Assembly (NCBI GenBank): GCA_977030845.1
Contig: OZ365117.1
Span: 3,100,001-3,164,000, forward strand
Reading direction: 5' to 3'
Length of the DNA: 64,000 nt
Source of the DNA: Fimbriosthenelais zetlandica
Taxonomy: Eukaryota
Part shown: piece after piece, positions 254 through 30,200 of the stretch
How positions within the stretch are numbered: the stretch's first letter is position 1
How the letters are laid out: every line of letters begins with the position of its first letter
Notes under the pieces: generated by a model
The model's input: only the letters and a program-made list of their open reading frames with translations
What the model was told of the DNA's origin: nothing
Database searches by the model: none
Made by a program: the position numbers and the translations under genes

Positions 254-3200
254 CTATTTACAGCAAGAGATGGATCATAGTAATAAGCGATAAAACAAAG
301 ACGGGTTTTTGAAGAGAGAGAAAGAGAAAGAGAGGTCTTGAAAGAGAGTCATGGTACTTGTCTGTACAATGTTTGGGATTCTTCATAACTGCAATCCACC
401 CCTCCCTATTCACTTAGTGTCATGTATTGAGGTCTTTCAAACTAAATATAAATTGTAATGTTAAATCAATAAACAAATTTGGAATATTTACTGAATTTAT
501 CACAGAGAAAAGGGAGATTGCTGGTATAAATACCCCTGATTCTCCACCAAGACCAACTCTTTCATAAGGATATTTCCGTGGAATATATTTGACAGAATTA
601 GGGCATTTTAGTTTTGGGGAACTCTACTTCTTTTTCTATATATGTAACCCTAGGTATTCAGAACACAGATTCCTACATAGAACTCTGGATAATATTTACA
701 AAGCATAACATATTTCTTATTGTATGTCCATGCCTTGTTGAAGGTATGACTAAACAATAAGATAATAATAAAACTGCTGAGTGAAGCAAGGTGTACAGAT
801 CTTAATACTAAAGGTGTATAATTATCTAACATTGAATCTAACAAAGCCAACAGGTGGGCACATAGGTGCTTATCAAATGTATACTACACATCATGCATTT
901 TAAGAGAAACATATGTATACAATTCTATAGGCTCTAAAAGCCACAAGATTGAGATTAATATTTTACATAGTTTATTGGCAAATGTGAGGATATTTTTAAT
1001 TTAAATTTGCGGGAAGCAACTGCTTAAAGTTATGAGTTATGTTTATAGAACAACTAATAAAAGGAAGCAGAATATTTGGAATTCTAAACAACACTTTGAT
1101 GTCGAAAGTAACGCTATATTATTCAATTGAGGGAAGTTAATTGTTTCTGAGATCCATTAGGGACAATTTGTTAGTATATTTATATAGTAATTTTAGGGGT
1201 TTCTTACATTTTTACATTAAATGTTTCTTACATTTCTCTTTATAAAGTACAGAGTATACTTTTCTTATTGTATTTGTTACAAGTATCCAGAAAATGACAA
1301 AAATAAAGTTATTTTTAGGAAAATTATTAGCAGTTTCTTTTCTGAAAGTTTCCATATAGTGTGTCATACGTTTCGTCTACCTGTACATTGCTCTATATGT
1401 ATATACAATGTACCTAGGATAATAATAAAGCCTCCAGACTTACCAGTGACTGTGACGTTGGCCTCATGCACGGCCTCACCCGCGTTATTCTTCACCACAC
1501 ACTTGTAGACACCGGCTTGTTTCTGGGTAATCTTCTCAATGATGAGCACGCTCGAGTCAGGACGGGTCGTAATCCTTGACCTGAGTGTGGACACTACCTC
1601 AGTTTTATTGCTGAAAATAAACAGAAATTTACTATGAAATGTCCTGAGCAAATGGTTGAGCCAGTGGCAAAGAAGAAGCAAGCGAATAACAACAATCATA
1701 AGTGAAATTTGTGCATATATTTAGTGCATAAAAGTCTTGTAGACAAGCTTCATATGCAGGAATCACTGCAAGAATCACCAGGCAATGATCCCTGGTATGT
1801 TACCAATTAACTTACCAGGTCATTTGAAATATCTACTAGATATTCATGACTTGCAATCCTTGCAAAGTTTCATACCCATGTTTTCCTATGCCTGCCCACA
1901 GAGCAGGTTATCAAGATATGTAGCAATAAACTCGCCCTAACTTACCATGTCCAGGTGACCCTTGGTGGTGGTTTCCCTTTGAACTTGGTCTTCAGTTCAA
2001 GCTTAGTTGTTTCCATCAGAGACTGTATGGTACAAAGAAACAAAGCATTAAGGAAGTTCCGGATTAATTTCATGTTGTGTTGAACTACTCAATCAAAAGC
2101 TGTGGTTTTAACAGAAAAATTCAACTCACAATGTCCTCATAGGTCTCAGTGAAGACAGGAGCGCCCGGTCTCTTGGGTTTCTCCTCTGGTTTTTTCTCTG
2201 GCGTTTTCTCCTTGGGTTTCTCTGGAGACTTGTCTTTGGGTTTCTTCGTGTCTGCTGGTTTGACTTCCTCAGGTACAGCAGGTTCCGGCGTAGCCGGCTC
2301 CTTCACTGGCGATTTCTTCTTCATGGCTTCAGGTACCTTCTTCTCAGGTACCTTTTCTGGAGTCTTCTCTTTGGGTTTAGCTGCAGATAGGATCAATTGA
2401 TCAATTTTTCGTGTAGGAATTAGCTCAAGACAAAGGATTTCCACCTACATCTAAACATATCACAAATCTGAACTACAAGACATGAAGCATTTACATTCTT
2501 TACAGGATATATTATGTCAATCTAAAGACCTTACCAATGACTTTTAGCTTGGCGCTAGCACTCAGAGTGCCTTGGTTATTCGTTGCCTTGACGACAATCA
2601 GTCCAGCCTGTGACGTGGTGCACTCTTTCAGAGTGAGGCTGTACACTTGACCTTCACTGGTGTAGATGACCTTGTCTGAGGGGACAAGTTTCTCCTCGCC
2701 CTTGAACCATTCCACCTCTGGCGTTGGTTTACCAGAGACGGTGGTCTCAAAGCGAGCATCCTCCTGTTCCTTGATTTCTACATCATTAGGTTTCTTCAGG
2801 AACTTTGGCTTGTCCATTTTGGCTGTCACTTTTACATTGGCGTAGCAAGAATCTTCCCCTGCTGGATTTTTGGCGACAAATTTGTAGGCAGCTGCGTCTG
2901 CCTCTGTCAGTTCATCCAAGGTGAGCACAACATTCAGCTCTTGACGAACGTCCTTGAAGTCGACCTTGGTACGACTATCTGGTTTGAGAGGCTCATCATT
3001 CTTGAAGACTGTGATTTCTGGTTTGGGTGTACCCTTAGCTTGTGCTGCCAGTTTGACACCTTGACCCTCTTTGACATCTTTGTTCATGGGTTTCAGTGTG
3101 AATTTGGCGGGTTCCATCTTCTTACAGATGGTGACCTTGGATGAATGTTCACACTGACCAAACTTGTTTGTGGCCACTACTTTATACACGCCACTCATTT

Positions 3201-6200
3201 TCTCTGTCATACCCGCGATGGTGAGAGAACAGTCCTCTCCTTTACGAGCGACTTTATTTTTGAAGTTTGGTTTGAGCTCAGTGTCGTCACGGAACCATTT
3301 CACTTCCGGTTCCGGTTTACCTTTGACTTTAGTCTTCAAGATGAGAGTTTTCTTCTCTTCCAGTGTCTGAAGGAATTACATTAAAAATATGAAATGATCC
3401 ATCAACAATAATCATGAGTTAATTATAATAATTATTATGTTTTTTCTGCAATGTATCTACTGGCAAATGAGAATTTTGATTTCGTACTGGGCCATTAAAT
3501 TGAAAAGATAATTCAGAAGACTTTATAACATTTAATTTTGCTTTGTGTTGGTATTTCTTGATCAATATCAGTTATGAATAGCTTCAAGCTAATGTTATAC
3601 TTTTCTGTAAACGCACCGACGCTAAATAAAGTTTGAAATGAAATGAAATCTTTACCGTCTCTTCATAGACCTCTATGAACTCGGGTCCATTCCCTTCTTT
3701 CTTGATGACCTCAATTGTGGCCTTGGTGCGGATTTCTCCAAACGTGTTCTTGGCCACGACTTCATACTCTCCGATCTCCTCCACAGTGACTTGTGTGATC
3801 TCCAGGTAATGGACGTCATATCTGTAGGTGACGGTGAAGCGACCTTCTGATTTAACCTCTTTACCCTTGAAGAACCAGGTGACGTCTGGTGTGGGTTCAC
3901 CCAGGACCTGGCACGTCAGGGCAGCTGGTTCACCTTCGTTGACCTTGGTGGGTTGGGGTTTGATCACGAATTCTGGAGCTTCACCTTTAGGTTCTGGCTT
4001 TGGAGCTTCAGGTGTTGGTGCTGTTTCGACAACTGGAGCTTCTTCCACTGCAGGTGGTGAAGGCTCTTCTGGAACTGGTAGTGACAAGCAAAAACTGTTG
4101 TTGTTTACTGCAGAAAGTGTGTATCATATAATTTATATTCTCACAGAATGAGTCTTGTATTAGGTACTGTACTGCAAATCAACATAACACAAATTTATGG
4201 CATTTTCAAATCCTTACTTGGCCGTTCAACTTTGGCTTCTGTTGTGAGAGTAACTTATTTGTTAATAAGACCAAATCAACATTAAATAATGTCTTAATTT
4301 TAAATGTGGAGTGTTATATCTATAATTGCTTTGTCAACCAAATATATTAGAGGCACATATTTCCTTTGACACTGAACCGGAAGCCGAAACCGTAAATAGA
4401 AAGGAACCAGAGAACTGCATAAGCCGGACTGTCTGCTTAAATGTATGAATGGCGTTTCACATTTCGCTGAGATAAGTCTGCTCAGTCTCTTCGCTGCCTG
4501 GATTCTCCGTCTGTGGTCTAGCCAGTCTAGTCAATGCTTGTGAGATGTAAGTATATCTCGCATTACGATGATCTGTACAAGAAATTTCTTAGCTATCTCC
4601 AACTTTAATGAGTCTTAATGTCTATCTTAATGATGTCTATCTTAACTATCTTTAATAAGAATCTTACGCTAATCTATCATGTATTTCGTTAGAAACTTAT
4701 TATATGTTTCTTATTGGATTATTAAAGGAGGACTACACTATGAAGATCCAGGATTGTCAGAATCTACATGGAGCAGACATCCCATGTCCTCACTAAGGTA
4801 CTTACTCTCATCTTCTATGCCTTTAAACAAATATTTTTATCAGCTGCAATTATCTTTAAAATACTATGTAACTTCTAACTTAATTCTATGAATGTGTCTT
4901 AACAATGTTTAATCTAAAAATACTAAGTAACTTCTAACTTAATTCTATGAATGTGTCTTAACAATATTAAATGAACGGTACTATAAACTCCTTATATAAG
5001 TAGTGTCTTAAGAAGTAACTCTATGAAGGTATACTATACCAGTAGGACATTGCTTGAGGAGATAACATGATACACCTTGACCAGGGTGGTGGACAATGTC
5101 TAACAGTGAGCTCTAAACATGTCTACCAAGCGAACCAGTAACACCTGCATTATGGAGAAAGGTTAATGGACATTCAAAAATTCCTAAAAACTTCTCATTT
5201 TCCCCAATGTTAATAAAGTGAGAAATACTGAGATTTTTGGAATTTGTGAACAAGGAGTAATATGCAAACATCAAGCAATGCACTGGCAGTATGTCATGCA
5301 AAAAACGAGTGGGGTGAACAAGAGGGAAGAATAAAAACTTGACAAGCAAAGAACTTATAAAGGATGCAATTACATTTTAATATCTTTATTAATTAAACAA
5401 CAAGGATTGATTATAAATTCTAGGTGTAAGGTAAAGACATAACAATGTTGAACACATGTTACCTCTACAAAAACCAAATAGTACATTATATGGTCATCGG
5501 GCGCTAGGCATAAAGTATGAGAGCCCAGCCACCATGCTGTGACGTCAGTGATCAGGGAATTAATGGCTGTAACCACGTTTAAATGAAGCATCAGAAAATC
5601 ATGGGAATATTTCTACATGAAATACTACATAACATAAAACACACTACCGTACATACAGACACAACTTGATGAAAATAGGGATTTACATGTGTCATGCATT
5701 TTGGTATCAAACAAAGGGTGTGGTGGGATATCAGAATGAATACTCGTATATATACGCACACCATGCGATAACTAAGGTCGGGGTTTACAACATATAATAT
5801 AACCAACTAATACTAAAGGAATGTTGGCAAGTATAATGTCCATTTGTAACGCTCACTTTACATAGTCTGCTATAGTATATCATCACACAGGTTTACTTGA
5901 CGCAGCTCAACTTTTGCCCAGACTTTCATCTGGTGTATTTGTCAGATTAGGTTTCATAAGCTTGCTTTACTTTGCATCCATTAGATTAAAGCTAATGTAC
6001 AATTAATGCCGAAAGATAATGTTTGTTATAAGTCATTTATATGAAGACTTTGTGAGAAATTGTTTGCCGCGATATCCCAAGCATGATAGGCTATAAATAA
6101 ACTAATAAATCATTGACTTTGATAATATCAGACTTAGTAGCAATATATCTCTGTTTGTGACGAAAGCTAATATTGTCTTTATGTTAGATCATCTTATACA

Positions 6201-9200
6201 TAAGAAATACTTGTGATTATTTATAATGTCAGTATGCCAAGGCTGCCTGCATTTCTCGATTACAAATCAACTTCAGTTGATTGTAACTTCAATAAAATAA
6301 AAATAACTATGTTGATTGACGGTGATGCAGACGTAAGAGTATAAAGAGGAATATAAGTATAAGTATAACAATAATGAGGAGTAGTAGGAGGTTACTGGAA
6401 GCACCCAGCAGATTAACCATGAGAGCACTAGTTAGGGCGGAGTAAGCTAAAGCGGACACCGGAACCTTAGCAGGGGGTATACTACCCTCCTCGGTGACTT
6501 TACCTGAAAACAAGACACAGCAAAACCAATGTTCTTAATTATTAACATTCCTTACATTAATAACAAAGGTTCAACAGGGAAAAGTCAACATCAGGCTGGT
6601 TCTTCGACAATTAATTCACACATTGAGTATTGTATTTGCCGGTGCATAAGTCACCCATTTCTCCTGCTGTCCCTTAAGAAGTCTTAGTCTCTCACTTTCA
6701 AAAGTTTGTTTAGGGCCACATATAGACTAAAGAGTGACTTATATGCCGGCAGATACAGTATTTGAAAAGGAACACACAGAAGGTTAACCTAAGATTAACT
6801 TTAACAAAGAACAATTATACTTATGAAGATATCATGGAACTAATGTAACACAACAAAGCAAACTACCTTGGTCACAAGGTCCAATAAACATGCATAGATA
6901 AGATTACAAAATTTAAAACATTCAAACCTGGTAGGTTTTAGTACTAATATCAAGTAAGAGTAACACAATATTAAGGCTTATTTGGCATGCTTATGGTTTG
7001 AAAGCGGGATGGGGTAGTTAACCATTCTCAGGGAAATCGAATAAAGCAGGACTTTAGTTCAAATCAAGGCTGGAGCAGTCAGTCATGGGAACCCTAGTAT
7101 ACTACATCATGTGTAAAATGTTTACACATTTGTCACCTCCAGGAAAGTAGTTTAGAACTTACATGCATTTGGATAATTAATGTTAGAAAAATTCACACTG
7201 CTTAAAATGTAGACGCTCTTCTTAAATTCAGAAGTTCAAAATTGTAAATATAGTCACCAAATTGGCAGGCACCAGGATCAAGATGAATAACATTATTTCA
7301 GGCAATGCAACAGGAGCAGCTTGGCAGGTCAAGGACATCCAGCCCAATGTGAAGATTGACAAGGTCAGGGGAGGCACATTATTAACAAGAAACAATTCAT
7401 TCCCTACAAATTACTCAAACATTGTGGTTAGAATGTCGACATGTTTGTTTCCAGAGGAAAAGCAAAAACAAAAAACCTCCAAATACCCAGCATCCAGACC
7501 TTGGAAGCTTTCCCTGGGTTTTAGTGCATGCCTGAGATTAAGCGAGGTCTTACACAATGAATCTAGCCACATGAAGGGGTCTAATGGTTGTATGATTGTT
7601 CACTACTCTGACTCTTATATACATGATTACACCAGAGTTAATTGTGGACGGTAGGGTAGCAGGCAGGAGGTGGTGTCCCTGAACGGATGGCAGGTCTTAC
7701 CGGGAGAACCATGCATAGGAGAGCAGAGACGTAGAGTGGAGATAGAAAGACTAACAAACCTTGAAGGATCAGGTGAGCCTCTGAGATGGCTTCACCCGCT
7801 AAGTTTCTGGCTTGACACATATATGTCATCTCAGTGTCGTCAATCGTGACGTTGGTTATAGTCAGTTGAACGACATCCTCTTGTCGCATCATCTGGTATT
7901 TTTCTGAAGCACCTATGGCCATTCCTGATATCAGCCATTTTGTTTCTGGTTCTGGCTTGCCAGCGACGCGGCACTCAAGTGTCACGTCACTTTTCAATGT
8001 CACTGGGGTGTCCTTGAGAGGTTCAGTGAAGAGGGGAAGGACAAAGTCTATGGTAACATCAGCAGATGATGTGGTGGTACCAAAGTCGTTAGACACAACG
8101 ATGGTGTATTCTGCTGAGTCTTCTACGGTAGAGTAGGGGATCTCCAACGTAAAGGTCAGATCTTCTGTCTGACTCGTTCTGTAAGTAATCGCCAATATGA
8201 TTTGGAACATAAGGATGTTAAAAATTACCATCAGCATAAAGTTTTATAAATCTCATATATTGTATTAAATGGAGGGAATTAATGAAAAAAGTACAGCCAA
8301 ATTTCAGACGATTGGACACCGGACGATTGGACACTAGACCATTTGACACTAGACCATTGGACACTAGACCATTGGACACTAGACCATTGGACACTAGACC
8401 ATTGAACACTAGACCATTGGAGACCAGACAAAGACGGATGAGACTTACATGTATCTGTCACCAATGAGTTCCTGTTGCTGCCTCAGCCAAGTGACAGTCA
8501 CCTCTTGCTGACTGGAGACTTGACAGGTCAGTGTAATCGTCTGGCCAACAAAGACAGTGATAGACTCCAGGTATCGTACAAAGGTAGGAGCATCACCCGT
8601 GATGGCCTGAGAGTCGACCTGTACCAACAATGACACCTTAATATATCATCACAAATACACACCAATATATTCTCCTCAAAGTCCTTTTATTTATCTTTTT
8701 TATGGTTTTATGTTATGAGAATGTATAGAGTTTGAGGACATTGAAATGCATATTATCCTACCAAGGTATGAACTATACAGCTGCAGTTTATAATTATCTA
8801 AAACATGCAAGCTGCTTCTTGAAAATCATAAGGAGTTACTAGAAAACTTATAAGAATGAAATGCACTACTCGAACATAATATATCAAAGGCACTACAGTT
8901 TAAATAAATGATAATAAGCATAAATCATAAAAGTTAAAAGAAAATTGAAGTAAATGTCCAAAGCCTTAATCTAGATACTTATGAACTAAGCCTTAAAATT
9001 ATCTAAGAACCTTAAAGGAAATATAATTGATATTTATGTGATCAATAATATAATAAACTATTGTTAATTTATTAGTGCTTTTTCACACAATTTTCACACA
9101 ATTGTCATGAGGTGTTAAGGTTTTAATCATAATAAAACACATGATTAGTGAGTTTTATATATTACCAGATCTTTCTCGGAGCTGGTCTCTCGCTTGGCAG

Positions 9201-12200
9201 CCTCGATGGATTCCTCCACCAGGGATTGAGCGATCTCAGTCACATCAGGGGTAACTTCCGGTTCAGGGAGCACACTAGGTTTAGGTTCTACATCCTCCAA
9301 GGGGAGCACACCTTCTTCAGGGGCTTCCTCCATCAGGATGACTTCCCCTTCAACATGCTGGGGAGGTTCAGTGTCAGGTTTGGGGGTTTCAATCACTTTT
9401 TCAGTTTCAGTTGGTAATGTTAGTTCAATAGAATCGGCTTCATCAGCCTTTTCCTCTGGGATTGTCATAGTCAATGTTTCTTCTGTTGTCTCAGTCTGTT
9501 GTTCAGGCTGTGTTATTACCTCAGTAACAAACTCTTCTGTTTTCTCAGTTGGTTTCACCTCTAGAGGTTCTTCTGGTTTCACCAACAGTTGCTCAGTTGC
9601 TTCCTCTTCAAGTACAACCATCTGCACTTCTGGCACATCAGGCTCAACCTTCTCTGAAACAACTTCCTCAGGTATCTCTTTCTTTTCAGCCATTTTGACT
9701 TCAAGAGTCTTCTCTGGGGTTGTTGCTTCTTCTTGGATGGTAATTTCCTCTTTTGGTTCCTCTTTCAAAAGGATTTCTTCAGCCACTTGTACTTTCTCCT
9801 CAGGCTCTTTGTCTTTGATCTTTTCTGCCTCAGGGGCTTTTGACAAAGGAAGGGCTTCCTCTGTCACTTCCCCGAGCACTAATTCAACTGCTGCCTCCTC
9901 TACAACTTGAGGTGTTGGTTCTTTTAGTTCCTCCACTATTTCTCCTTCCTCTGTGAGTATTGTCTCATCAGTTGAGATCTCTTCTGCTTGTTTTACTGGG
10001 AGTATCATTTCAGCAGCCTCTTCAACAGTTGTTGGTTGTTCTGGCACAATTGGTTTTATTTCTGTCACTTCCTCAACAGACTCAACAGTTGCTGGTTCCA
10101 CTTTGAGTATCGTCTCATCAGTTGAGATCTCTTCTGCTTGTTGTAGTGGAAGTATCATTTCAGCAGCCTCTTCAACAGTTGTAGGTTCCTCTGAGACAAC
10201 TGGTTTTATTTCTTTCACTTCCTCAAAGCCTGTTTCATCAACAGACTCTTCAACAGTTGCTGGTTCCACTTTGAGTATTGTCTCATCAATTGAGACCTCT
10301 TCAGCTTGTTGTACTGGGAGTACCATTTCAGCAGCCTCTTTAACAGTTGTTGGTTCCTCTGGAGCAATTGGTACTACTTCTTCCACTTGTTCAAAGGTCG
10401 TTTCTTCCTCAGGTTTCACTTCCTGTACTGTTTCATCTGTTGAGATCTCTTCTGTTTGTTTTACTGGGAGTACCATTTCAGCAGCTTCTTCAACAGTTGT
10501 TGGTTCTTTTGGCTCAATTGGTTTTATTTCTTTCACTTCCTCAACAGACTCAACAGTTGCTGGTTCCACTTTGAGTATTGTCTCATCAATTGAGATATCT
10601 TCTGCCTGTTGTACAGGGAGTACCATTTCAGCAGCCTCTTCAACGTTTGCTGGTTCCACTTTGACTATTTCTTCTGCTTGTTTTGCTGGAAGCACCATTT
10701 CAGCGGCCTCTTGAACAGTTGTTGGTTCTTCTGTCACAATTGGTTTTATTTCGGTCACTTCCTCAACAGATTCAACAGTTGCTGGTTCCACTTTGAGTAT
10801 TGTCTCATCAATTGAGATCTCTTCTGCTTGTTTTACTGGAAGTTCCATTTCAGCGGCCTCTTCAACAGTTGTAGGTTCCTCTGAGACAATTGGTACTACT
10901 TCGCCCACTTGTTCAAAGGTCGTTTCTTCCTCAGGTTTCATTTTGTGTACTGTTTTATCGGTTGAGATCTTTTCAGCTTGTTTTACTGGAAGCACCATTT
11001 CAGCAGCCTCTTCAACAGTTGTTGGTTCCTCTGGCACAATTGGTTTTATTTCTGTCACTTCCTCAAAGCCTGTTTCTTCATCAGTTGCTGGTTCCACTTT
11101 GACTTTTGCCTCATCAATTGAGATCTCTTCTGCTTGTTTTGCAGGGAGTACCATTTCAGCGGCCTCTTCAACAGTTGTTGGTTCCTCTGACACAATTGGT
11201 TTTATTTCTGTCACTTCCTCAACAGACTCAACAGTTGCTGGTTCCACTTTGAGTATTGTCTCATCAATTGAGATCTCTTCAGCTCGTTTTACTGGAAGCA
11301 CCATTTCAGCGGCTTCTTCAACAGCTATTGGTTCCTCTGGCGCAATTGGTACTACTTCTTCCACTTGTTCAAAGGTCGTTTCTTCCTCAGGTTTCACTGC
11401 CTGTACTGTTTTATCTGTTGAGATCTCTTCTGCCTGTTTTACTGGGAGCACCATTTCAGCAGCCTCTTCAACAGTTGTTGGTTCCTCTGACACAACTGGT
11501 TTTATTTCTTTGATATCATCAAGAACTGTTTCTTCTTCTGGAACCTCTAATACTTTTTCTTCCACTGCTACAAGTTCAGCTGGCCTCTCTGGTGATTGTG
11601 ATTTGTCAATCAATTCCTCTTGAACAACAGGTTCTTCCGGTAGCTCCTTTTGCAGTACTATCTGCTCTGTTTCTTGAATAAGTGTTTTCTCCTCTGGATG
11701 TTCAACAACAGACTCTGTAGCATCCTCAAATATTTCCTCTTCTTCTTCCACTGTTTCTTCAGGCATTTCTTCCTCAGTTATTTCAGCCTTGAGAGGTGTT
11801 GCTGGCTCTGTTATCTTCTTTTCCACTGGCCTTTCTTCTGGAAGTGCCTTATCAAGAACCACTTCAACCACTTGTGTCTCTCCAGTTTCCAGGGCAGGTT
11901 CTAAAGGCAATATATCTTCAGCTTCCACAAATATTTCCTCTTCCTCAGGCACTTTCTTCACTAATATTTTCTCTTCTGCTGAAACAGACTCTTCCACCTT
12001 TTCAGGTGATATTGGGAGTTCTTTCTCAACTGATACTTCTTCTGAAATTCCTTTATCAAGCTTCTTTTCCACATCTTGAACAACTTCTACCTTTCCATGA
12101 ATTTCTGTTATTAGTTCCTCAGGTTGTTCAAATGTTTCAGCTGCTTCTTCTGTTGCTTTAAATAATTCAGATGGTTCATCTTCTGATAATTTCTCTGTGG

Positions 12201-15200
12201 GAATTTCTTTAGGTACTTCCACTTCAGTGGGTTGCACTTCAGGTAATTTGTCTTTGTCTTCAGGCTTCTTTTCCGTGACCTTTTCTTCCTCAGGTGTCAT
12301 TAGCTCAGGTACAATTTCCTTGGGTTTTTCAGGAACTACCTCATCAGCTGGTTCTACTGGTGTTTCCGCCTTGTATACAAGCTCTTTAGGGACTTCTTCT
12401 GCCACTAACTGAGGCAACTCTTCAACTGATTTCATCAATGTTTCCTCCTGTTTGGGTTCTTCAAGTGGGATCACCTGTTCAGAAACATCTTCAAGTTCGC
12501 TTTCTTTTTCCTTACGCTGCTGGAATGGTTGGGGAATCATGCAAATCATTTGAAACTCAACACAACAAGTACACCACAACCAAATGTAGATTAGAGTTTT
12601 GCATCTTATTAAACTTAGACCCTTAGAAGTATTTGGTGTAAAATCTTAATTTGTATGAATTCTCGTCCGATGCCAGGAAGGTAAGTAATATGTGGAAAAA
12701 CTCGGTAAAGGGGGGCATTAAATATTAATGAATACACACAGATTCTTAACAAGTGAAGTGATTATAAGAAACTGAAGAATATTAGAACTTATGTTCGTAA
12801 TATCCTAATACAAAGATTCCTCAGGACCACATCCCAATAGAGTTGTCTTAGATTTGTAATAGTAAATCACTGCTGCGAAAATTAAGTATACTTTAAAGAT
12901 ACATTTTCTTTTCATTTCATACTAAACCAGAAAGATAATCAATTCCGGATCTTTTCAACCTTAAAGAGCAGTATACTTAATTTTCACAGGAGTTCTTGTG
13001 AATAGGATCTTACACAGGAACACACTTAAAAGTTATGTCAGAAAAACACCACAATGTAGCAGGCATTCGTGTCTTACCTGTTCTTCTTTGAGGACCTTGA
13101 CTTTCTGTCTGGCCTGCATACCGCGGAATGCTGCCTGAATCTTCACGGCAGCATCCTCATGCGTTTCCTCTTGTGTAGTTATCATAGTCTCCTCAGCGAA
13201 GAGTTCTGTGTTAATAGAGTAGCGTAAAGAAACTCATTAATCTATTACATAACAGCTCTCTGATCTATTACTTAGCAGAGGTGGCATATAGCCAAGTAAA
13301 CTATCCATTAGTACTGAAATGTAGGACTCAGAGTGGTATGTAGTGCATGCTGACTCAAAACATGCTGAACATCCAAGACCTCCTTTTAAAATTTGTAATT
13401 TGTTGAGAACATGCTGAACACTCCATTATAATGGTTTTTCAAAAGATCCCACAATTTAAAAACAAACATGGCAGGGAGAAACAAAAGTCTAGAACATTCT
13501 AGGTTAAAAGGTTTCAACAGGTTCAATTTCGGTAGGTATTATTTGTTCTGTTCTGTCATAAATAAAATAACATTCCAACTAGGTAAACCAACCATTTGAA
13601 ATCCAAATGTGTAACATTGAATTAATAAGGTAGTGAACTATGGTAAATGCTATATAATTGATCCTATAAAGTGTGATTTTAACATGTTATCATCATGCAG
13701 TCACTCACCATCTACAATCAACATAGCATTGCGTTCTTGCACGCCAAGGTGGTTGGTAGCCTTGACGGTATATATGCCAGCATCCTCAGGGAAGGCCTCG
13801 GGGAGGTAGAGGGAGTGCGTGCCATCCTCCTCTGCCTCCACCACATATATATCATCACTCTGTAACAATTCTCCTTCAAAGTACCACAACACTTCAATCT
13901 CAGACGTGCCACTCACGTTACAAACAAACCGAGCAGGCTCACCTTCACGGACGTGGACATCCTCTGGTGCTTGTTCGAAGGTTACTGCACCCTACATACA
14001 GAGGCAACGGTTTACAGTGAAAAATATATTCATACACATTGATAAGTAAAGCCCGACATCCACTGTACGATCTTTGGACAAACAGATTTTTTTGATCGGA
14101 AAAGATCAAAATTAAATCTTTCCTGATCATTTCTCTATTGATTTAACATTGAAAAATCGCCGCCGATCCCAAGATTTTGGCATCCACCAGCCGATCATCT
14201 GTTTTTGGGGTACCGATCGCCTGTGATCGCTTAAGATCGCAAAATCGGGATGAAAATCGGACTGGTGGATGTCGGGCTTTAATCGGTGATTGCCAACAGT
14301 ATAATTTTCAGACAATAGTCCAAATAAATGAGGCTTTGAAGAGGGTTTGGTTCCAATATTAATGAATAGCTGCCAGGGCTTCACTGCATGAAATTACATC
14401 TATTAACATGTCACTTTTTTATGTAAGTCAAATTGTATGTTACAGACTTGAATAATTATATTCACAAACGGTGGCATTATTTCATTTAAAAACAAAATAG
14501 ATTAAGAGCATTCTTCCCAAGTCAAAAGCCAATACAGTAAATATATAGACTCCAAATACCCGGAGAACAGAGATTAAATTCAGAAGTTATGTGGAGAAGA
14601 ATAAAATCATGCAATTAGTAGTATCATACAGGGTGAAGTCCTGGTTAAGGATGTGTCTCATTTCACAAATAAAAGATGTATATTAAACAGGGAAAGGACT
14701 AAATATTTAGGGAGGAGAACAAACCTCGGGAAGGCGTGAGACTCGTCTGTGTTCATGAGTAGAATGCCTTCTTTTGTTCTCATCAACTTCTGTTTTAACA
14801 TCATTTTCGTCATGTTTTGACTGAGTTTTTTCTGACGCTTCATCAGTGGATGGTCCAGAGGGGGCCTCACACCTTAAATCTACTTCAATAGTACTTTGTT
14901 CTTGATCTGCTGGACTATTACCAGCAGCACTGCCATTGATTTGCCCATTATTTTCATCAGAAGCAACAATGTTTATTGTGGGAACAGAAATTCCAAATTG
15001 CTTTGATACAATTTCTTGTTCTTCAAATGTTTCAGCTTCAGATAGTTTCCCGGGAAATACTTTTGGTTCACTTTCACAATCGTATGAAGCAGCTTCTGTG
15101 GGTATGCTCTCACTATTGTCTTGCTGTGAGAATTCCAGACAGTCTTCAGCATCTTCCTGAGCAAATTCTTCCATCAACTGTTCAGCAAACGATGAACTTC

Positions 15201-18200: not shown

Positions 18201-21200
18201 GGATTCTTCACATCCTTCTAAAGTCCTGGTCATGTAAAGTCCTAAAGTTAATTGGTTCAGTACACAACCCCGAGGCAAATATAATAGTGCTTTTTTAAGA
18301 TAACATCTATGTTACTATTAGTTGAATTTTAGTTTGATAATAAGGCCTGAACCTGGGCCATATTCACAGCAATCAAGTCATATACAGCATGTATTTTAGC
18401 GTTTGTTGTCAGCAGCCTCGACTCAGCTGTCATATAGAAAGAAATCTGCTGTTAACAAACTGCAACAAGTCTTCAACCATCCTAAAGTCTGGTGAAATGA
18501 TGAGTATGTCTCCTTAAAGAAACATTCCTTGATGGTTGAAGACAGGTTGACAGATAAAATAAGAAAGATTAGGTGTGATGTGGTGGGTGATATGGCGATA
18601 TAGGTTAGTAGCACTGATGAAAACCATCATACATCATGGACTAATCAAATGATTGCTTCCAGCAGTTACTGATACATTGCATCAAGGACCATTAACCTCC
18701 TCTGCTGTAAACAAAGTGTAAGCCACTCAAGGACAACAGCTCGCCATACAAGATGGCCGACAGTGTCATCGTCAGCTGCTGTCCTTTAATCAACCAAGTG
18801 GCAAGTGAACGAGTTAACTATTAAAGTCATTCAAATGCTCACTATTAGTATGAAAAAATCCCTTAGACATCAAGGGACATTTCATCAACTAAAGAACAAC
18901 TATCCTTATTCTAGTATCATGGAAAATAATGATTATAATACAAACCAATGAATGCTGAAACTTATCATATTTACAGGAAGAGTTTGTCGAGTTTTAAGGG
19001 TTAACTTACGGTTTACGATGAGGGAGACAGACATGTTGAGTTCACCGTACTCGTTGTTGGCCACCACCTTGTAGCTGCCAGCATCTTGCTGGGTGATCTC
19101 ATTAATGTGGAGCATCACAGTGTACGTGTTGTCATCCTGTCTCACTTCACTCTCATACCGTCCCTCAAGATTCTCAACGATGAATTCATTGTGTGTCCAA
19201 TAGATCTGATGAAGAAAGATTATTGTTTAAAGAGAGTGAATGCAGGAAGAGTCTGGCCCCATCATGAAGGGAAAAGCAGTGCAAAAACTGATGGCGATCA
19301 ATAGTCAACTATGTGAGAATGATGACTTACCATTGGTGTTGGATATGCGTTTATTTTAGCCTCAAATGTAACCGATTCTCCTTCAGTCACAGTCTGGGCT
19401 TTGGGTTTAGAGACAATGCTGGGAGCCATGCCTGCTTCCTTTGGTTCCTCAGGAGCTGATGAAAAACAACATTGATTGAAATAAAGAACTAAACAAATGA
19501 TAGTGGAATGTAGAATTCATCTCAGGATAAAGCAGTTTCTTGCCATAGTTCATTTAGCGATATCATATCAAATATTTCACTGATAACATTATAACATTAT
19601 ATTTCCATCATTATATCTAAAGACATTGAACTGAAAGAGTTTAAAGCTTATCGCTATCTAAAGTGCAGAAAATATAAGCGAAAGAATGAACTGAATTGAA
19701 TGGTTAGGAGAGGACATGCATATTTCTTGTAACAAATTAAACAAATCAAACCATGCTCTTACCCTCGAGTACGACCAGCTCAGCTGAACATGTGGTCGTG
19801 CCTGCTGGGTTTTTAGCTACCACAGTGTACCTGCCTGTATCCTCAGGGAACACCTCCTTGATGACCAGTGAACACAGATTATCATCATCGTAGAACTGTA
19901 GGAAATCTGGTGACGGTTCAATAAGACAGCTGTCTCTGAACCATCGTATGCTGGGCTCTGGTTTACCAATCAAACCACACTCAAACCGTGCCATGCAACC
20001 ATCAATGATACTCTGACTCTTCAAAGGTTTTGTAAACTCAGGAGCCTGTACTTCCCCATCATATTCATCTAAAGAATCTGGGGAAAATTAACAAAAGAAA
20101 ATACTGATGAAATATCTTTTCAGCCTTTCCAAGCAATGCTTGTATGCACTCCTGGTCTAAGTGATGATATGGATCATGATGTCATTAAGTAACCAAAAGC
20201 TCATATAAGGCTTTGCTCGACTGGGAAGTGTTAAAAAATAAAATTTCAGTAAAAAAAAATGACAAAAATCTTTATCCCGAGGATCTTACTTGTGTCAACA
20301 TGAATGTCGTCAATGGCCCTTGTCAACTGCCGCTCAACTAGACGGTTATAATCTGCCTTCTCTTTGAGGTAAGTACCAGGCACCCAGCCTTCCTTCCCAT
20401 TAAATGACTTCTTCACAAGCCACCAGTCATCCTGGGAGTCGTCGAGCACCTCTACCTTCTCACCCTCGTGAAGTGACATCACCTCATCTGACTCAGGATC
20501 GTATGTACTGATGGCTATAAAGTATAACCTGTCATCTCCCCGATCAGAACCACTGAATATAGAGTGAGATGACATCCCATCTGATTCAGGAACAGTCCCC
20601 AGTGAAGGAGCTGATACAGATATGTTATCACCTTCTTCAGGCTTCTGTTCAGCCACCGCTGAGTGAGTGTAGATACTCTCTTGTCTCTCTCGGCTTTTTC
20701 TGAGTTCCTTTAAGTCCGTGTCTGTACTGATTTCAGTGTGTTGTTCTAGCGATACTCCGCCACTGCTTTTCAGTTCCATCTTGATTGTTTTAACTTCAGT
20801 TACTTTTGTATGGACAGTAACTTCTTCTAATAGCTGAGATTCCTCTGTTTTGTAAACTTTGTCTGTCTCCAGTTGTAAACCAACTAGATTTTCCACACCT
20901 TTATCACCGTGAGAGAAGACCATGTCTGGTCTGAGAGTCACCTCAAATGTTGGTTCTAATGGTTCACGTTTTGGCGTTGCTCTGATCTGATATTCCTCCT
21001 CAGAATCATCAGGAGAGATGGACACCTCCTGCTCTATCTCTCGTACCACCATCTGTTTCACTTGTTCAGCTTTTATCTGATCGTTTTTAACAGTGGGGTG
21101 GGGTATGATTGTAACGCTTGTCGTTTCATAGACAAAAGGTTCAGACTGGGTTATAGTCATCTCCCTCAACCTCTCGTTAGTAAATGAAGGTTTCCCTGCC

Positions 21201-24200
21201 TCATCCACTCCCTCCATCTCACTGTACTGCCTCTGTACGTCTGTACCTTCAGGTTTCAGTTTGGCGATCTCTGCCTTCTTCTCATCTATCTTTTCAGCGA
21301 TACTTTCAATGTTGATCAACTCTTCCATTTCAGCAGCGATGACTCGGGACTCAGACTGGACGGAATCACCGTCAGATGATTCACCATCTCCAGCTTTAGT
21401 TAGTAGATTCAACTCACTGTCTTCCTCGTCTTCTGAGGAAGGAGATTCTGACTCTTCACTCGCCCAGACTTGAGGCTGGACTTTAAGAGTTGGCGACTGT
21501 GGAGACTCATACTCCACAGTCTCCATCTCTGTTTTTATTTCTTGTACCTCAACAATTTCCTTTTTCTGGGGAACAACAGGCTCTTCCCGGGCCTCTTCGT
21601 CACTCTCTTCTACATCATGAGTGTCCTCAGTAACTACATATCCAAGGGAATCTGTATTTTTCTGTGAATCTTGCATTTCTAGATCTGACTCCTCTGAGGA
21701 GCTATCTGAAGGCAGTTTGAGCCTGGGTACTGGTAGAACCACCCGGTCACTCTTCACTGATATAATCTCTGTCTCTGACACTTCCAGGTCGGAGTATTCG
21801 TCCTCTGAGATGATCTCCTCCACTTCCTTACCGTCTCTAAGTTCGTCTTCTACCTCAGGAACTTCTCGCTCTTCCTCAGCTGTAACATGCACACAGCAAG
21901 TTCCAAATGAACCAAACGTCATGCAAAAACTTCAAACCAAAACTAAGGGAATATAATAAATTCGATGATAAAGAAATAAAGTAAGGATATGTGAACATAA
22001 ACGGGATAGAATGTAATATACTATTGCTTACGTGTACATGCATTATACTCTAAAAGGGGTGTTTCAAAAAGTGAGGGCAAACAAAAGGTAAATGAAAACA
22101 TCTTAAGGTACCTTGAACTGTTAGACCAGCCTGTACATCCTGAGTTGTCTGTATGGTCATGGTGGCCTCGCCAGCATCAACAGTGTCCTGACTGATACTG
22201 AAGTTAACACATGGACATCTGGATTAGTGGGTAGGTTCTTACACTTTAATCTATTTTATTTTAAATTTAATTCAGAGGAAGGATAATCTTATTTCACTTA
22301 ACATGATCTTAAGAAGGGTATTATTAACCAAATTCATTAAAGAGCCAATTTATTTCCTCTGATTCTTGCCAAGCTGTATACTTAGCAAGCCCTTTGATAC
22401 GGCTACCAATGCCTTAAGGGCAAATGGAAATATGTGAAATTGAATATGAATTGATTTTCATTTATGTCTTGCAGTTATATGGAATGAAAATGGAAAGAAT
22501 TTTGTGCCGTTGACAGTTGAAACCATCTGATTATTTGGTTCGCTACGGGCAAAATTCGGGCCCTTTAATAAATTCAAATAAGATATTTACCTGAATACAG
22601 TCTCAGCCTGTTCAACTGCAGAAGCAAAAGAAATAAAAGGGCAAATATTATTCACTGCCATTTTCAACATTAGTAAGGGTTAGAACATTAGAAAACAATG
22701 AATAAAAGATTCAATTATTAAAACAATCCAGAACTTCAATTAAAACTTTTCTGATTATTGCAGAAGGTGTTTTTATATGTTGATATAATTTGATGAAATT
22801 TATTTCTTACTGATGTGAAAGTCAAAATTTAACTTTATTCAGTTATCATAAACCACACAAAAATGAAAGTTAATGTCTTCTGAAAAGAAAATCATGCATT
22901 AATAATATAAATGTATCTTGACATTAGTTCAAAAGAAAGATAAATAATCATTAGGGGATTGGGAACATGCCTTCAAAAACAGAAAAGAATGCACACATTA
23001 TCGCTATATATTGCGACCGTGATTTTCACATGAAAATCATTACAACTCTGAAACATGTGTAGAATACATGAGTATAAAACCATGTTGGCTACTCATGTGT
23101 TTTATCTGACAACATGATTTGATCTAAGAATAAATAGAAAATAAAAGTAGAGAACAACTTAACACATGCACTGTTTACACACCTGGCAATGCATGAAGAG
23201 TCATGAACCTGAACTCTACCAACCACATAATAATAATAATTATAAAGAAATGAAGAACTGATGTAAGAAACTTCCTACGTAAAATAAGCAGAAGTGAACA
23301 CTGAAACGCAAATCTCTTGCAATGGGCACAAACAGAGAACATGTTGATCAAGATAGCATACATGAAACAAAAAATGAATGTGGAAGACATGTCGCAGGCG
23401 CATAACATGAATGGGTTGATGTGAATGTAGGTATATTAAGTAGGATGGCAGGAAAATAGCGCGTCACACAAAATAGAGGCGCAAATAATGCAGAGATTCA
23501 AGAAGCAGGAAGATTTCTAGACTCATCAGCAGCGGAAAAGTTTGAACAGAGCGAAATAAAAGCGCTACAAATAATAGTATTAAAAACGAAATCTAATGAG
23601 GACAAAAGATATTGCACAACATTGAGAATGAAGCATACTATGCTGTGAATGTCAATGTCAGCAGTCATGCGTCAGTCATGCAGACAGGTACCTTGCTGAA
23701 TGCTCTCGGCTTGTACTGCTGTCTTCTTTGTCACTTTTACTTTCTTGGTCACGTCGGCAGTCTCCTGCTGCACAGCCTGCACCTCCATAACAGCTGCAGC
23801 TTCCTCAACCATTTCAGGCGCAATCTCAGCTTTCTGGCCAACCACTTCAGTCACTGTCTTCTTAGTGACTTTAGCTTTCTTGGTGGTTTTGGCAGTTTCA
23901 GCAGGCTTAGCCTCTTCAACAGCCATGGCCATGGTCTCTTCTGTCACTTCCGGTGCCAGTTGAGCTTCCTGAGCAGCAACTTGGGTGACAACTTTCTTGG
24001 TGACTTTAGCAGTCTCTGTCACTGTTGTGGTTTCTGTGGGTTGGACTTCATCGGTGGTAAATGTGACAGTCTCTTCTGTCACCTCAGGAGCCATCTGTGC
24101 TTCCTGGGTGCCGACCTTTGTCACGGTTTTCTTGGTGACTTTGGTTGTTCCCATTTGAACTTTACCCACATCTTCAGGCTGTACTTCTGCTGTTGTAAAG

Positions 24201-27200: not shown

Positions 27201-30200
27201 GTCTGGATGACGATTTGCCCGGTAGTGGCGGTCTCTTGTGATAGAGTCACTGGTTGATCTTGTACCATTTCAAGCGTCATCTGAGATTGCTGCATCTGAC
27301 CCATGGCCTGGATCTGTGCAGGCATGGTGACACCAGCTCGCGTCGTCTCAGTGACTATCTCAGCAGGAACTGCGCTCTCTTCTGTCACAGTCGTCGGCTG
27401 GTCTTGGACAATTTCAAAGGTCATTTGTGACTGTTGCATTTGTCCCATGGCTTGGACTTGAGCTGGCATTGTGACTCCAGCTTGAGTGGTGGCTGATAGA
27501 ATGTCATGAGTGACAGCTGTTTCCTGGGTGACCTTGGTTTCACCTTCCTGAACTATTTCCATCTTCATCTCAGCCATTTGCATCTGGCCCATGGCTTGGA
27601 CCTGAGCTGGCATGGTGACGCCAGCCTGTGTCATCTCGACTGTTATCTGGCCAGGCTCAGCCTCAGCTTCAGTGAATGTTGTAGGTTGGTCCTGGACTGT
27701 CTCCATAGTCAGGTGAGCTTGGTGGATATGACCCAAAGCCTGGACCTGTGCAGGAAGTGTCATTCCAGCTTGGGTCATTCTTTGTGAGACCTCGCTAGGC
27801 CACACACTCTCACTAACCTCTTCTGTTATACTGTCTGATATTGTCTCAGTAGGGATGTCCATCTTTTGCATACCAACTTGCATTTGAGATGGCATTTGTT
27901 TGCTGTCGATTGAAATCATGGTCGAGCTTATTTCCATGGGAATGGCAGTTTGCTCAGAAACTGGCTCAATACCCTCTTGTGTGAATTCTATTTTGACCTC
28001 TGAAAAGTGGTAGACACAAATAAATGATCAGTAACTTAAAATACATGAGCAAGTAGCGCATAGATCTTAACTAGAGTTTTGAAAGATTCTTAAGGAGAAA
28101 GAAGAGAGACATAGACTTAGAGAAATTCAGGAGAGATGTGACGTAGGATATTTAAAACGATTGATATACATTTGAAACTTATATAATCTAAATTATACAT
28201 GAAAAAACAAAACGGCACATGCACACGGCGCTCACATAATGCTTAGCAAGGCATAAACTGACAAATAAAAAGTAAATAATAGAAATAAAATTCAAATGGC
28301 ACAAACTAATATTGCATGAGAATAATGTGCAGAAAGCAAAAGAAATGAACAGAGAAATATATAAACTATACATAAAGTGTGAGAAGAAGAAACAACTGAA
28401 AATTAGACCAGATAAATGACATATAATAACGAAAATGGGTGGACACGGAGGGTGGATTATACCTTACTTGTATTATATGGAAATAAAAGGGGTAGGATAT
28501 CTACTAGGACAAAGGGATCTTAGCATTTTGACCTATTAAATAAGAAATGAGTGAGTGAACCAAATAAACTTCTTCGATAGTATAGACATGAACAGAAGTG
28601 AATCTGAAATAAATGGTAAGTGAATAACTTAAAGAAAAGCTCTAGAGAAGATAAATGAACTGATCCTGAAATGAGACATGCGCGCAAATAATCAGTGAGA
28701 TCATGCAACTACGTGGAGGTGTAGGTGAACATAGAGAGGGACAGATAAAAACATAGAATAAGTCATACATTTAGAACGAGAATAAATGTATCACAAACTT
28801 GTCTGAACATAAGAGCTTTAGTCACTCCGCCCAGTAAAGGCAGCAGAGAAAAGGCATACATAACCTAGAATAAAACAGATGAATAAAGAAGGCTGCGCAC
28901 ATGCCCAAATGGTGCTGCTGCCGCATGTCAACCAATTGGAGCAAATACAGAAGATTCATGCAAAAAGAAATATGAAATATTAAGTTGTCATGCCCAGCCC
29001 TACAATACTTGTAGAACTAATCTAATATCTAAGATGCTACGGCAACAAAAATTCTGTGCAAGCGCTGAACGGTGTGGCATAGTCATGCTCTGAGGACCAG
29101 AGCATGAAGCAGAAACCTGATCATGGTTTCAGTGACATACGGCCATGCTTGAATCCACATGATATACCTTCACATTCTTCCGGAGCATCGCCAAGTTTCT
29201 CCTTCACTTCTAATGCTTCAACAGAAGGTTTCTTCATGTCCAGAGTGACGTCTTCAGGAACCAGGGACATGTCAGACGGCATGGTGAAGTCCCCAGCAGC
29301 TGTATCTTCTGTCGTTACTTCAGTAAACTGAACACCAGCCTGCATCTCTCTCAACAACTCAGGTTCTACTTTAACTTTCTCATCAGGAATGTCTGTGCTA
29401 CTAATCTCTGTGCTGGCTATTTCCTGGACTTCCTCAGTGATTTCTGGTTGAATTTCGGAAGTTATTTGACCAGCCTGTGCTTCTTTGGGAAGCTCAAACT
29501 GAACAGTACCATAATCAGTTGTAATGTGTGATGGTTCCACAGATTCATGCTCCTGAGGCTTCAACTCCTCTGATACAGTTTCAGTTTTTATTTCCTCTTG
29601 CTGGAGACCAATCTGAGATGGTTCAGGCAGCACAACACCTGCACTGAAGATCTCAACTTTGGTATCAGTTGGTTGGACTTCTTCACCAGTTTCGATTGTA
29701 ATTTCTTCTGAAATCATTTCTGGTTTCAATTCAGCTTGTTGTAGTCCTATCTGAGTTGGTTGTGGCATTTCTATTCCAGCAGTTGAGATTTCCATCGTCA
29801 CTTGAGATGGTTCAATGCCTTCGTCCTTCTGGATTACAATTTCCTGGCTTACACTTTCTTGCTTAAGCTCAGCTTGTTGGATTCCTATCTGAGTTGGTTG
29901 TGGCATTTCAATCCCTGCCGTTGAGATTTCCATTGTAACCTGTGATGGTTCAATGCCTTCGTCCTTCTGGATTATGATTTCTTGGCTTACACTTTCTGGT
30001 TTGAGCTCAGCCTGCTGGATTCCTATCTGAGTTGGTTGAGGCATTTCTATGCCAGCAGTTGAGATTTCCATTGTCACTTGTGATGGTTCAATGCCTTCGT
30101 CCTTCTGGATTACAATTTCCTGGCTTACGGTTTCTGGCTTATGCTCAGCTTGTTGTATTCCTATCTGAGTTGGTTGTGGCATTTCAACACCAGCAGTTGA

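What the first reader, a model, noticed from the sequence alone, without database searches (positions are those of the whole stretch)
6307..6503. Hidden terminal exon gives a titin-like giant a transmembrane tail anchor
Inside an intron, a strong acceptor (tcttgttttcag|) in exactly the phase left by the preceding Ig exon opens GKVTEEGSIPPAKVPVSALAYSALTSALMVNLLGASSN-LLLLLIIVILILIFLFILL-RLHHRQST*. This is 19 uninterrupted aliphatic/aromatic residues with only 8 residues after them, the architecture of a tail-anchored membrane protein, preceded by a second mildly hydrophobic segment. Clustered poly(A) hexamers lie 0.92 kb downstream. Titin/Sallimus-family proteins are known to me as purely cytoskeletal. 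It lacks the PPPX end of a KASH domain, so it is not a nesprin-type anchor. Inference: an isoform of up to more than 1 MDa inserted in SR/ER or another membrane.
Basis: partly seen in the sequence, partly recalled or inferred. Interest (0 to 1): 0.85.

Follow-up and report, generated by a model that had tools for sequence, protein, structure and literature searches.

The report
Unproven membrane-tail reading frame in titin intron
Inside an intron of a giant titin-like muscle gene there is a splice-site-plus-reading-frame that would end the protein in a very greasy membrane-type tail. Nothing I could reach shows that it is ever used, so it is at present an intriguing but unproven candidate and more likely a by-product of T-rich intron DNA.

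Summary
On the minus strand a good acceptor (CAG at 6506-6504) opens, in the phase left by the Ig exon ending at 7760, a 65-codon frame. It ends in 19 consecutive L/I/V/F residues, 8 more residues and TAG (6309-6307).

This is not trivial noise:
- It is the only hydrophobic run of 19 or more in all six frames of the window; about 0.01 is expected.
- Every second codon position in the run is T, while positions 1 and 3 vary.
- The 37 codons before the run are GC-rich (top 1% of non-exon windows) and purine-N-pyrimidine periodic (top 1.5%).

No evidence of use could be obtained:
- No RNA run was listed.
- The peptide has no relative among 1.84 billion cluster representatives.
- The only relative's contig stops about 400 nt short of the orthologous spot.

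A pure 19/19 T-at-position-2 run is unusual for an evolved membrane helix and typical of T-rich non-coding DNA. Similar chance cases are expected genome-wide.

Verdict: observation confirmed; the tail-anchored titin isoform cannot be judged (my estimate about 0.25). The most likely single reading is a cryptic, unconserved intronic frame (about 0.45).

I also found a weak constitutive donor, a conserved strong second donor 59 nt downstream, and conserved intronic elements, which suggest regulated splicing here.

The parts
7760..8178 (-). Upstream Ig exon (end of one I-set domain plus a whole one). It ends in phase 1 at 7760.
   Evidence: Pfam I-set E 4e-25. Boundaries read. The orthologous exon in the relative (P0001/L001) is 83.5% identical in protein and 77.7% in DNA.
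7754..7762 (-). Constitutive donor AAG|GTTTGT (cut 7760|7759). It is weak.
   Evidence: Rough donor PWM score 0.6. Identical in the relative. It is the only phase that fits the next exon at 4074.
7695..7703 (-). Second, strong donor CCG|GTAAGA (cut 7701|7700), phase 0, 59 nt into the intron.
   Evidence: Score 5.7, the best GT in the intron. Kept as TTG|GTAAGG in the relative, with an in-frame 3-nt length difference.
7299..7382 (-). Conserved intronic element.
   Evidence: 72-75% identical to L001 1392-1473, while 4-fold sites of the exon are only 44% identical.
6504..6523 (-). Candidate acceptor: pyrimidine/GT-rich tract plus CAG, directly followed by GTAAAG.
   Evidence: 10 of 14 pyrimidines at -18..-5. 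It is the only YAG|GTRAR site with a pyrimidine tract on the sense strand.
6391..6503 (-). First part of the candidate frame (38 residues, Gly-Lys-Val-Thr-Glu-Glu ... Ser-Ser-Asn).
   Evidence: GC 0.52 against an intron mean of 0.35, top 1% of non-exon windows, half of which are real small exons. R1+Y3 is 50 of 74, top 1.5% of open intronic windows, and G at position 1 is 14 of 37.
6334..6390 (-). 19-codon run coding only L/I/V/F.
   Evidence: T at codon position 2 in 19 of 19 codons. Positions 1 and 3 show lag-3 identity of 0.28. One G in 57 nt. (TATAAG)2.8 micro-repeat at 6352-6368.
6307..6333 (-). Eight-residue basic/polar end (Arg-Leu-His-His-Arg-Gln-Ser-Thr) and TAG stop.
5376..5390 (-). 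AATAAA plus ATTAAA, the nearest poly(A)-type hexamers downstream.
   Evidence: There are no others between 7760 and 5390.
3656..4074 (-). Next constitutive exon (PEVK-like lead plus I-set Ig). It needs a phase-1 donor.

Best explanation
Most likely this is a cryptic, non-conserved intronic reading frame and not a working exon. The sense strand of this gene's introns is T-rich. A G-poor patch with several short period-3 and period-6 micro-repeats happens to carry T at every second codon position in one frame, and that frame can only read as Leu/Ile/Val/Phe. A decoy acceptor lies 113 nt upstream in the same frame. If the acceptor is used at all, it would be at noise level or in a young, lineage-restricted transcript. 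The main product splices 7760 to 4074. Shown: the sequence features, the orphan status, and the frequency of decoy acceptors with open frames. Inferred: lack of expression and function.
For: - Strong acceptor plus an open frame of 50 or more codons is common in this window, also on the gene-free strand (14 and 6 cases).
- The run contains a tandem micro-repeat and only one G in 57 nt.
- All 19 residues are T-at-position-2 codons. From general knowledge of membrane helices this is unusual for an evolved helix, which normally carries some Ala/Gly/Ser/Thr/Cys/aromatic residues. It is what T-rich non-genic DNA gives (PMC7005711).
- No homologue among proteins of 36-112 aa in the 5.8 billion clusters, and none in 1.84 billion representatives; the single hit, P0002, is a spurious tandem-repeat ORF.
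- Atlas recognition is 1400 (below the 2300 mark) and the best score is 0.59.
- No Pfam hit.
- Synonymous codon use does not separate it from intronic ORFs; 17% of them score as high.
- The poly(A) hexamers are uninformative.
- Scaling the Markov rate to a whole animal genome gives several to tens of in-phase, sense-strand chance cases. A scan that flags any of them will meet some.
Against: - Within this window the run is a 0.01-level event in six frames, and about 0.0015 for the sense strand in the right phase.
- T is fixed at position 2 while positions 1 and 3 are at random-level lag-3 identity, so this is not a decayed trinucleotide microsatellite.
- The 111 nt after the acceptor are as GC-rich as real exons. 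Of the 8 high-GC blocks outside the giant exons, 4 are real small exons.
- Those 111 nt also show purine-N-pyrimidine periodicity in this frame only.
- The GC block starts at the acceptor.
- The flanking exon has a weak donor and conserved intronic elements, as alternatively processed exons often do.
Confidence: 0.45

Rival explanations
1. This is a genuine alternative terminal exon. Transcripts spliced 7760|6503 end near 5390 or earlier and encode a truncated giant isoform (all upstream Ig, SH3 and PEVK-like exons). Its last 27 residues are one membrane helix plus a short basic end, inserted after translation as a tail anchor into SR/ER or another membrane.
For: - The acceptor, phase, 65-codon frame and run are all present.
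- The run is statistically rare in this window.
- T is fixed at position 2 with variable positions 1 and 3, as selection for hydrophobicity would give.
- There is an exon-like GC block with purine-N-pyrimidine periodicity starting at the acceptor.
- No usable donor lies for 640 nt after the acceptor, so if it is an exon it is terminal.
- Titin-family genes do make truncated isoforms by internal termination: Kettin by an alternative poly-A site (PMC9886278), and Novex-3 (cited in PMC12198301).
- Weak donor and conserved intron elements sit next door.
Against: - No transcript evidence is obtainable.
- No homologue anywhere.
- The composition of the run is too pure for a typical evolved helix.
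- No membrane-spanning titin is described in the papers searched.
- The hexamers 0.9 kb away carry no weight.
Confidence: 0.25
2. The block is exon-derived but foreign or dead. It would be a fragment of another gene's last exon (for example the phase-1 membrane exon of an Ig-superfamily surface protein) or of a mobile element, inserted into the intron together with its acceptor and now unused by the titin-like gene.
For: Coding-like GC and periodicity. The layout 'stalk, helix, basic stop-transfer end' is that of a type I membrane protein's last exon. Phase 1 is the usual phase of Ig-superfamily exons (general knowledge), which would explain the phase match without selection in this gene.
Against: No source homologue in 1.84 billion representatives. 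No second copy in the window. No convincing terminal repeats; I2 arms are 72% complementary. No tRNA-like or Rfam match.
Confidence: 0.1
3. The acceptor is real but the frame behind it is irrelevant. CAG|GTAAAG is a juxtaposed acceptor and donor, that is, a recursive (zero-length exon) splice site. After a first splice it would replace the weak donor AAG|GTTTGT by AAG|GTAAAG. Alternatively an 18-nt micro-exon (Lys-Val-Thr-Glu-Glu-Gly) is used with the donor AGG|GTAGTA.
For: It is the only YAG|GTRAR site with a pyrimidine tract on the sense strand. As a donor it scores 4.1 against 0.6 for the constitutive donor. 18 nt keeps phase 1, and VTEE-type motifs are common in this gene's exons.
Against: The intron is only 3.7 kb, whereas known recursive sites serve very long introns (general knowledge). 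One such motif per strand per window is about the chance rate. The micro-exon donor scores -1.4, weaker than every real donor checked.
Confidence: 0.08
4. The alternative product uses the strong conserved donor at 7701|7700 (phase 0). This adds a 20-residue hydrophobic extension to the Ig exon. Entering the 6503 acceptor in phase 0 then gives only 18 basic residues and a stop, or the intron is simply retained. The membrane-like segment would then be the exon extension and not the reader's run.
For: The second donor and the 56-59 nt before it are kept in the relative, with an in-frame 3-nt length difference. Both read as hydrophobic peptides: 69-81% DNA identity against 44% at 4-fold sites. The phase-0 frame after 6503 is open for 18 codons.
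Against: Amino-acid changes in the extension are about as many as expected without protein-level constraint (9 replacements against 3 silent differences, read). After the second donor the two species differ by a 16-nt indel. U-rich stretches next to weak donors are a known type of splicing enhancer (general knowledge). No transcript data.
Confidence: 0.05

Closest known systems
Drosophila Sallimus short isoform (Kettin), made by an internal alternative poly-A site
   Same: An invertebrate titin-type gene (Ig, SH3, PEVK-like) that can be cut short after an Ig domain by an internal 3' end (PMC9886278). The gene here has I-set Ig, SH3 and acidic giant exons.
   Different: Kettin's end is soluble. 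No membrane helix is described, and use of the site here is unproven.
Vertebrate titin Novex-3 terminal exon (about 700 kDa isoform)
   Same: An alternative terminal exon in the I-band part of the gene that yields a truncated isoform with its own C-terminus (reference listed in PMC12198301).
   Different: Novex-3 binds obscurin and is not membrane-inserted. There is no sequence similarity.
Giant nesprins with a KASH tail
   Same: Proteins of up to about 1 MDa held in a membrane by a single C-terminal helix (general knowledge).
   Different: KASH has a luminal stretch of about 30 residues ending in PPPX. Here 8 residues end in Gln-Ser-Thr. Nesprins have spectrin repeats, not Ig.
Obscurin with small ankyrin-1 (ank1.5), the sarcomere-to-SR link
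   Same: The function proposed for the tail, tying a giant sarcomeric Ig protein to the SR (PMC2172649).
   Different: In that system the membrane anchor is a separate small protein that binds the giant one. Here it would be fused to the giant protein.
Membrane-helix-like ORFs arising from thymine-rich non-genic DNA
   Same: T-rich non-coding sequence reads as Leu/Ile/Val/Phe-rich helices in one frame (PMC7005711). The run here is 49% T with T at every position 2.
   Different: Those were described for yeast intergenic ORFs, not for an intron frame behind a splice acceptor.
Recursive splice sites (juxtaposed acceptor and donor)
   Same: Pyrimidine tract plus CAG|GTAAAG.
   Different: Known cases sit in introns of tens to hundreds of kb (general knowledge). 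This intron is 3.7 kb.

Membership tests
Tail-anchored membrane proteins | A single hydrophobic helix within about 30 residues of the C-terminus | tested here: met
   In the conceptual translation only: a 19-residue run with Kyte-Doolittle mean 3.94 and 8 residues after it.
Tail-anchored membrane proteins | No N-terminal signal peptide; cytosolic bulk | not testable with these tools
   The gene's 5' end lies outside the window. I-set, SH3 and IQ content fits a cytosolic protein.
Tail-anchored membrane proteins | The tail is actually transcribed, spliced on and translated | tested here: inconclusive
   No RNA run was listed. No protein in either collection carries the tail.
KASH-domain proteins | Luminal tail of about 30 residues ending in PPPX | tested here: not met
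   The 8-residue tail ends Arg-Gln-Ser-Thr.
Titin / connectin / Sallimus family (the host gene) | Tandem I-set Ig domains with long acidic or PEVK-like unique exons | tested here: met
   I-set hits in six exon ORFs. Giant open exons of 1,166 to 4,211 codons without Pfam hits.
Titin / connectin / Sallimus family (the host gene) | Ig/FN3 super-repeats and a C-terminal kinase | not tested
   These lie outside this window. Only first-stage notes mention them.
Alternative terminal exon | Usable acceptor in the right phase, an open frame to a stop, and no donor behind it | tested here: met
Alternative terminal exon | Conservation of the frame in relatives | tested here: inconclusive
   The relative's contigs L001/L002 end about 400 nt before the orthologous point. 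No ORF like it exists in the collections.
Alternative terminal exon | Poly(A) signal with 3' ends | tested here: inconclusive
   AATAAA and ATTAAA lie 0.92 kb downstream, at or below the background density. No reads.
Recursive splice site | Juxtaposed acceptor and donor consensus | tested here: met
   TTTTCAG|GTAAAG.
Recursive splice site | Host intron is very long | tested here: not met
   The intron 7759-4075 is 3,685 nt.

The most novel reading that the evidence does not exclude
An invertebrate titin/Sallimus-type gene makes, through a hidden terminal exon at 6503-6307, a truncated isoform of more than 1 MDa. Its own C-terminal helix inserts into SR/ER or the surface membrane. This would be a direct covalent sarcomere-to-membrane tether, doing in one molecule what obscurin plus small ankyrin-1 do in vertebrates.
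Probability: 0.22. Interest if true: 0.8.

Novelty: not a real feature. Interest (0 to 1): 0.38.

Why it matters
All described titin-family proteins are cytoskeletal. How myofibrils are tied to the SR or sarcolemma outside vertebrates is poorly understood. A titin isoform with its own membrane anchor would be a new architecture and directly testable. If instead it is a chance frame, the case is a useful calibration. T-rich sense-strand introns can imitate a membrane-tail exon down to phase, acceptor and stop, so such calls need junction reads or conservation. The conserved second donor and intronic elements beside the weak donor at 7760 are independent signs that splicing of this exon is regulated.

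Tried and rejected
- RNA evidence. Two searches for RNA runs, one over 5300-8000 and one over the exon 2512-3339, listed nothing.
- Homology of the tail. A word-indexed search, a full phmmer scan (whose only hit was the spurious repeat ORF P0002), the ESM Atlas and Pfam all found nothing.
- Conservation in a relative. The relative was found through the Ig exon, and contigs L001/L002 were fetched. tblastn of the tail against them found nothing. Colinear anchors then showed that the contigs stop short of the site, so this negative result is void.
- Extending the relative's sequence. The next exon found no relative, a metagenome scan found none, and the small called gene on L001 could not be looked up because it contains a stop.
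- Synonymous codon usage has too little bias in this gene to decide.
- Repeat or mobile-element origin. There is no second copy in the window, only weak inverted repeats, and no tRNA or Rfam match.
- A second hidden hydrophobic tail at 61263-61304 is a 14-residue run with no exon context.
- The idea that conservation of the first 60 intron bases proves a coding extension was rejected, because replacements are not depleted and other intron patches are equally conserved.

Full report
**What is there.** The gene lies on the minus strand. It is a titin/Sallimus-type gene.
- I-set Ig domains occur in the ORFs at 7761-8237, 3584-4087, 2512-3339, 1364-1699, 13701-13916, 19749-20087 and at the end of 53003-59995.
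- There is an SH3 domain in 20249-21931 and an IQ motif in 13036-13185.
- Giant open exons of 1,166 to 4,211 codons have no Pfam match.
- The Ig exon 8178-7760 ends CAAG|GTTTGT in phase 1.
- The next constitutive exon starts at 4074 and only reads correctly from a phase-1 donor. So 7759-4075 is a 3,685-nt intron.

**The observation.** 1,256 nt into this intron a pyrimidine/GT-rich tract ends in TTTTCAG (6510-6504).
- From 6503, in phase 1, the frame is open for 65 codons to TAG at 6309-6307.
- Codons 39-57 (6390-6334) encode only Leu, Ile, Val and Phe, with a Kyte-Doolittle 19-residue mean of 3.94. Eight residues follow.
- The upstream 'second hydrophobic segment' peaks at 1.48, which is sub-threshold.
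- AATAAA at 5390 and ATTAAA at 5381 lie 0.92 kb after the stop.

**Is it more than chance?** The evidence is mixed.

Points in favour of something real:
- It is the only hydrophobic run of 19 or more in six frames of the window; only one other reaches 14.
- Markov models of order 2 and 4, trained on the window's 23.8 kb of intron-like DNA, give 0.007-0.01 such runs in six frames. That is about 0.0015 for the sense strand in the right phase.
- The run has T at codon position 2 in 19 of 19 codons. Positions 1 and 3 have lag-3 identity of 0.28, which is the random level. So it is not a decayed trinucleotide repeat, although a (TATAAG)2.8 micro-repeat and short CTN and ATT repeats lie inside it.
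- The 111 nt between acceptor and run have GC 0.52 against an intron mean of 0.35. Only 0.96% of non-giant-exon windows reach this. Of the 8 blocks that do, 4 are real small exons.
- In this frame only, those 37 codons have purine at position 1 and pyrimidine at position 3 in 50 of 74 sites. That is the top 1.5% of open intronic windows. G at position 1 occurs in 14 of 37 codons, against an exon mean of 15.4 and an intron mean of 7.6.

Points against:
- A strong acceptor followed by an open frame of 50 or more codons is common: 14 times on the sense strand and 6 on the antisense control.
- The phase match is a one-in-three event.
- Synonymous codon usage cannot separate exon from intron in this gene.
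- The poly(A) hexamers are at or below background density.
- An all-T-at-position-2 helix is unusual for evolved membrane segments (general knowledge) and characteristic of T-rich non-genic DNA (PMC7005711).
- Scaled to a whole animal genome, the Markov rate predicts several to tens of in-phase, sense-strand chance cases. A scan that reports any of them will meet some.

**External evidence.**
- No RNA run was listed for the intron stretch or for a pure exon, so junctions could not be examined.
- The 64-residue peptide has no relative among proteins of 36-112 aa in the 5.8-billion-cluster collection.
- It has none in a full phmmer scan of 1.84 billion representatives. The one hit there is a tandem-repeat ORF scoring through five repeats.
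- The ESM Atlas gives recognition 1400 and a best score of 0.59.
- Papers searched mention no membrane-spanning titin.

**The one relative.**
- The Ig exon finds a single Logan protein, P0001, at 85% identity. It sits on 2.1-2.2 kb genomic contigs from ERR14368248/9.
- tblastn of the tail against these contigs finds nothing, and no forward frame beyond the exon read-through has a hydrophobic window of 2.0 or more.
- Sensitive alignment shows colinear anchors: window 7382-7299 with L001 1392-1473, and 7135-7106 with 1972-2000. These place the end of L001 opposite about 6900 in the window, roughly 400 nt before the candidate acceptor.
- The negative result therefore says nothing. Attempts to reach further failed.
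- Another agent's note calls this genome annelid-like. I did not test that.

**What the relative does show.**
- Four-fold degenerate sites of the exon are only 44% identical, and third positions 55%. Neutral DNA is therefore near saturation.
- Even so, the first 59 nt of the intron (69-81%), the next 74 nt (60-80%) and 7382-7299 (72-75%) are kept.
- The constitutive donor is weak, with a rough PWM score of 0.6.
- A strong donor, CCG|GTAAGA at 7701|7700 (score 5.7, the best GT in the intron), is kept in both species 59 and 56 nt downstream.
- The stretch between the two donors reads as a hydrophobic peptide in both species. But replacements are not depleted relative to silent changes (read). 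I therefore take it as a U-rich splicing-control region and not as proven coding sequence.
- These features suggest regulated processing at this exon. That raises the prior for some alternative event in this intron without pointing at the 6503 acceptor in particular.

**Other readings of the acceptor.**
- It is immediately followed by GTAAAG, giving CAG|GTAAAG, which is the form of a recursive splice site. It is the only such site with a pyrimidine tract on the sense strand, but one per strand per window is about the chance rate, and the intron is short.
- An 18-nt micro-exon would need the donor AGG|GTAGTA, which scores -1.4 and is weaker than every real donor checked.
- No donor scoring 1.5 or more lies between 6503 and 5857. 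If the block is an exon, it is terminal.
- Entered in phase 0 from the 7701 donor, it gives 18 residues and a stop.

**Weighing.** My estimates are:

| Reading | Probability |
|---|---|
| Cryptic, unconserved intronic frame | about 0.45 |
| Dead or foreign exon-derived fragment | about 0.10 |
| Recursive site or micro-exon | about 0.08 |
| Phase-0 entry from the second donor | about 0.05 |

The exon-like composition of the first 111 nt is the strongest point for a real exon. The orphan status and the too-pure run are the strongest points against. The decisive data are junction reads and the orthologous intron of relatives.

**Comparison with known systems.** Internal termination of titin-type genes is known, in Kettin (PMC9886278) and Novex-3 (cited in PMC12198301). 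Giant proteins held by one C-terminal helix are also known, namely the nesprins, but the KASH signature is absent here. The proposed function matches the obscurin and small ankyrin-1 link (PMC2172649). A titin-family protein with its own membrane helix has not been described in what I could search, so the reading would be new if true.

Noticed in passing
window 7695-7762 (-), L001 913-980: The Ig exon's constitutive donor AAG|GTTTGT is weak. A strong donor, CCG|GTAAGA, lies 59 nt downstream in phase 0. Both are kept in a relative whose 4-fold sites are only 44% identical, and the spacer differs by an in-frame 3 nt.
   Followed up: partly
window 7627-7700 and 7299-7382 (-), perhaps 7106-7135: Conserved intronic elements (60-80% identity to L001, against 44% at neutral sites), including an identical 17-mer CTACCCTACCGTCCACA near 7655-7640. 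Function unknown, possibly splicing control.
   Followed up: partly
window 6498-6510 (-): TTTTCAG|GTAAAG is an acceptor directly followed by a donor consensus, the form of a recursive splice site, inside a 3.7-kb intron.
   Followed up: partly
window 20249-21931 (-): SH3 domain (Pfam SH3_2, E 6.5e-12) at residues 470-524 of this exon ORF, as in arthropod Sallimus/I-connectin-type titins.
   Followed up: no
window 13036-13185 (-): IQ calmodulin-binding motif (Pfam IQ, E 4.6e-07) on a small exon-like ORF between Ig exons.
   Followed up: no
window 8306-8429: 15-nt tandem repeat, 8.3 copies at 90% match, starting about 20 nt downstream of the donor CAT|GTAAGT at 8449|8448.
   Followed up: no
window 37711-50343, 29124-36554, 53003-59995, 23675-28027, 9148-12645 (-): Five giant open exons (4,211, 2,477, 2,331, 1,451 and 1,166 codons), acidic and repeat-rich, with almost no Pfam match. 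The 9148-12645 exon carries about 50-residue repeats (…EEPTTVEEAAEMVLP…).
   Followed up: no
window 14100-14330 (-): GC-rich block with repeated GATCGG/CGATC motifs in an intron. It is not obviously coding and may be a mobile-element fragment.
   Followed up: no
window 4068-4076 (-): The next exon has two acceptors 6 nt apart (CCAG|TTCCAG|AAG), both compatible with phase 1. A two-residue (Val-Pro) difference would be possible.
   Followed up: no
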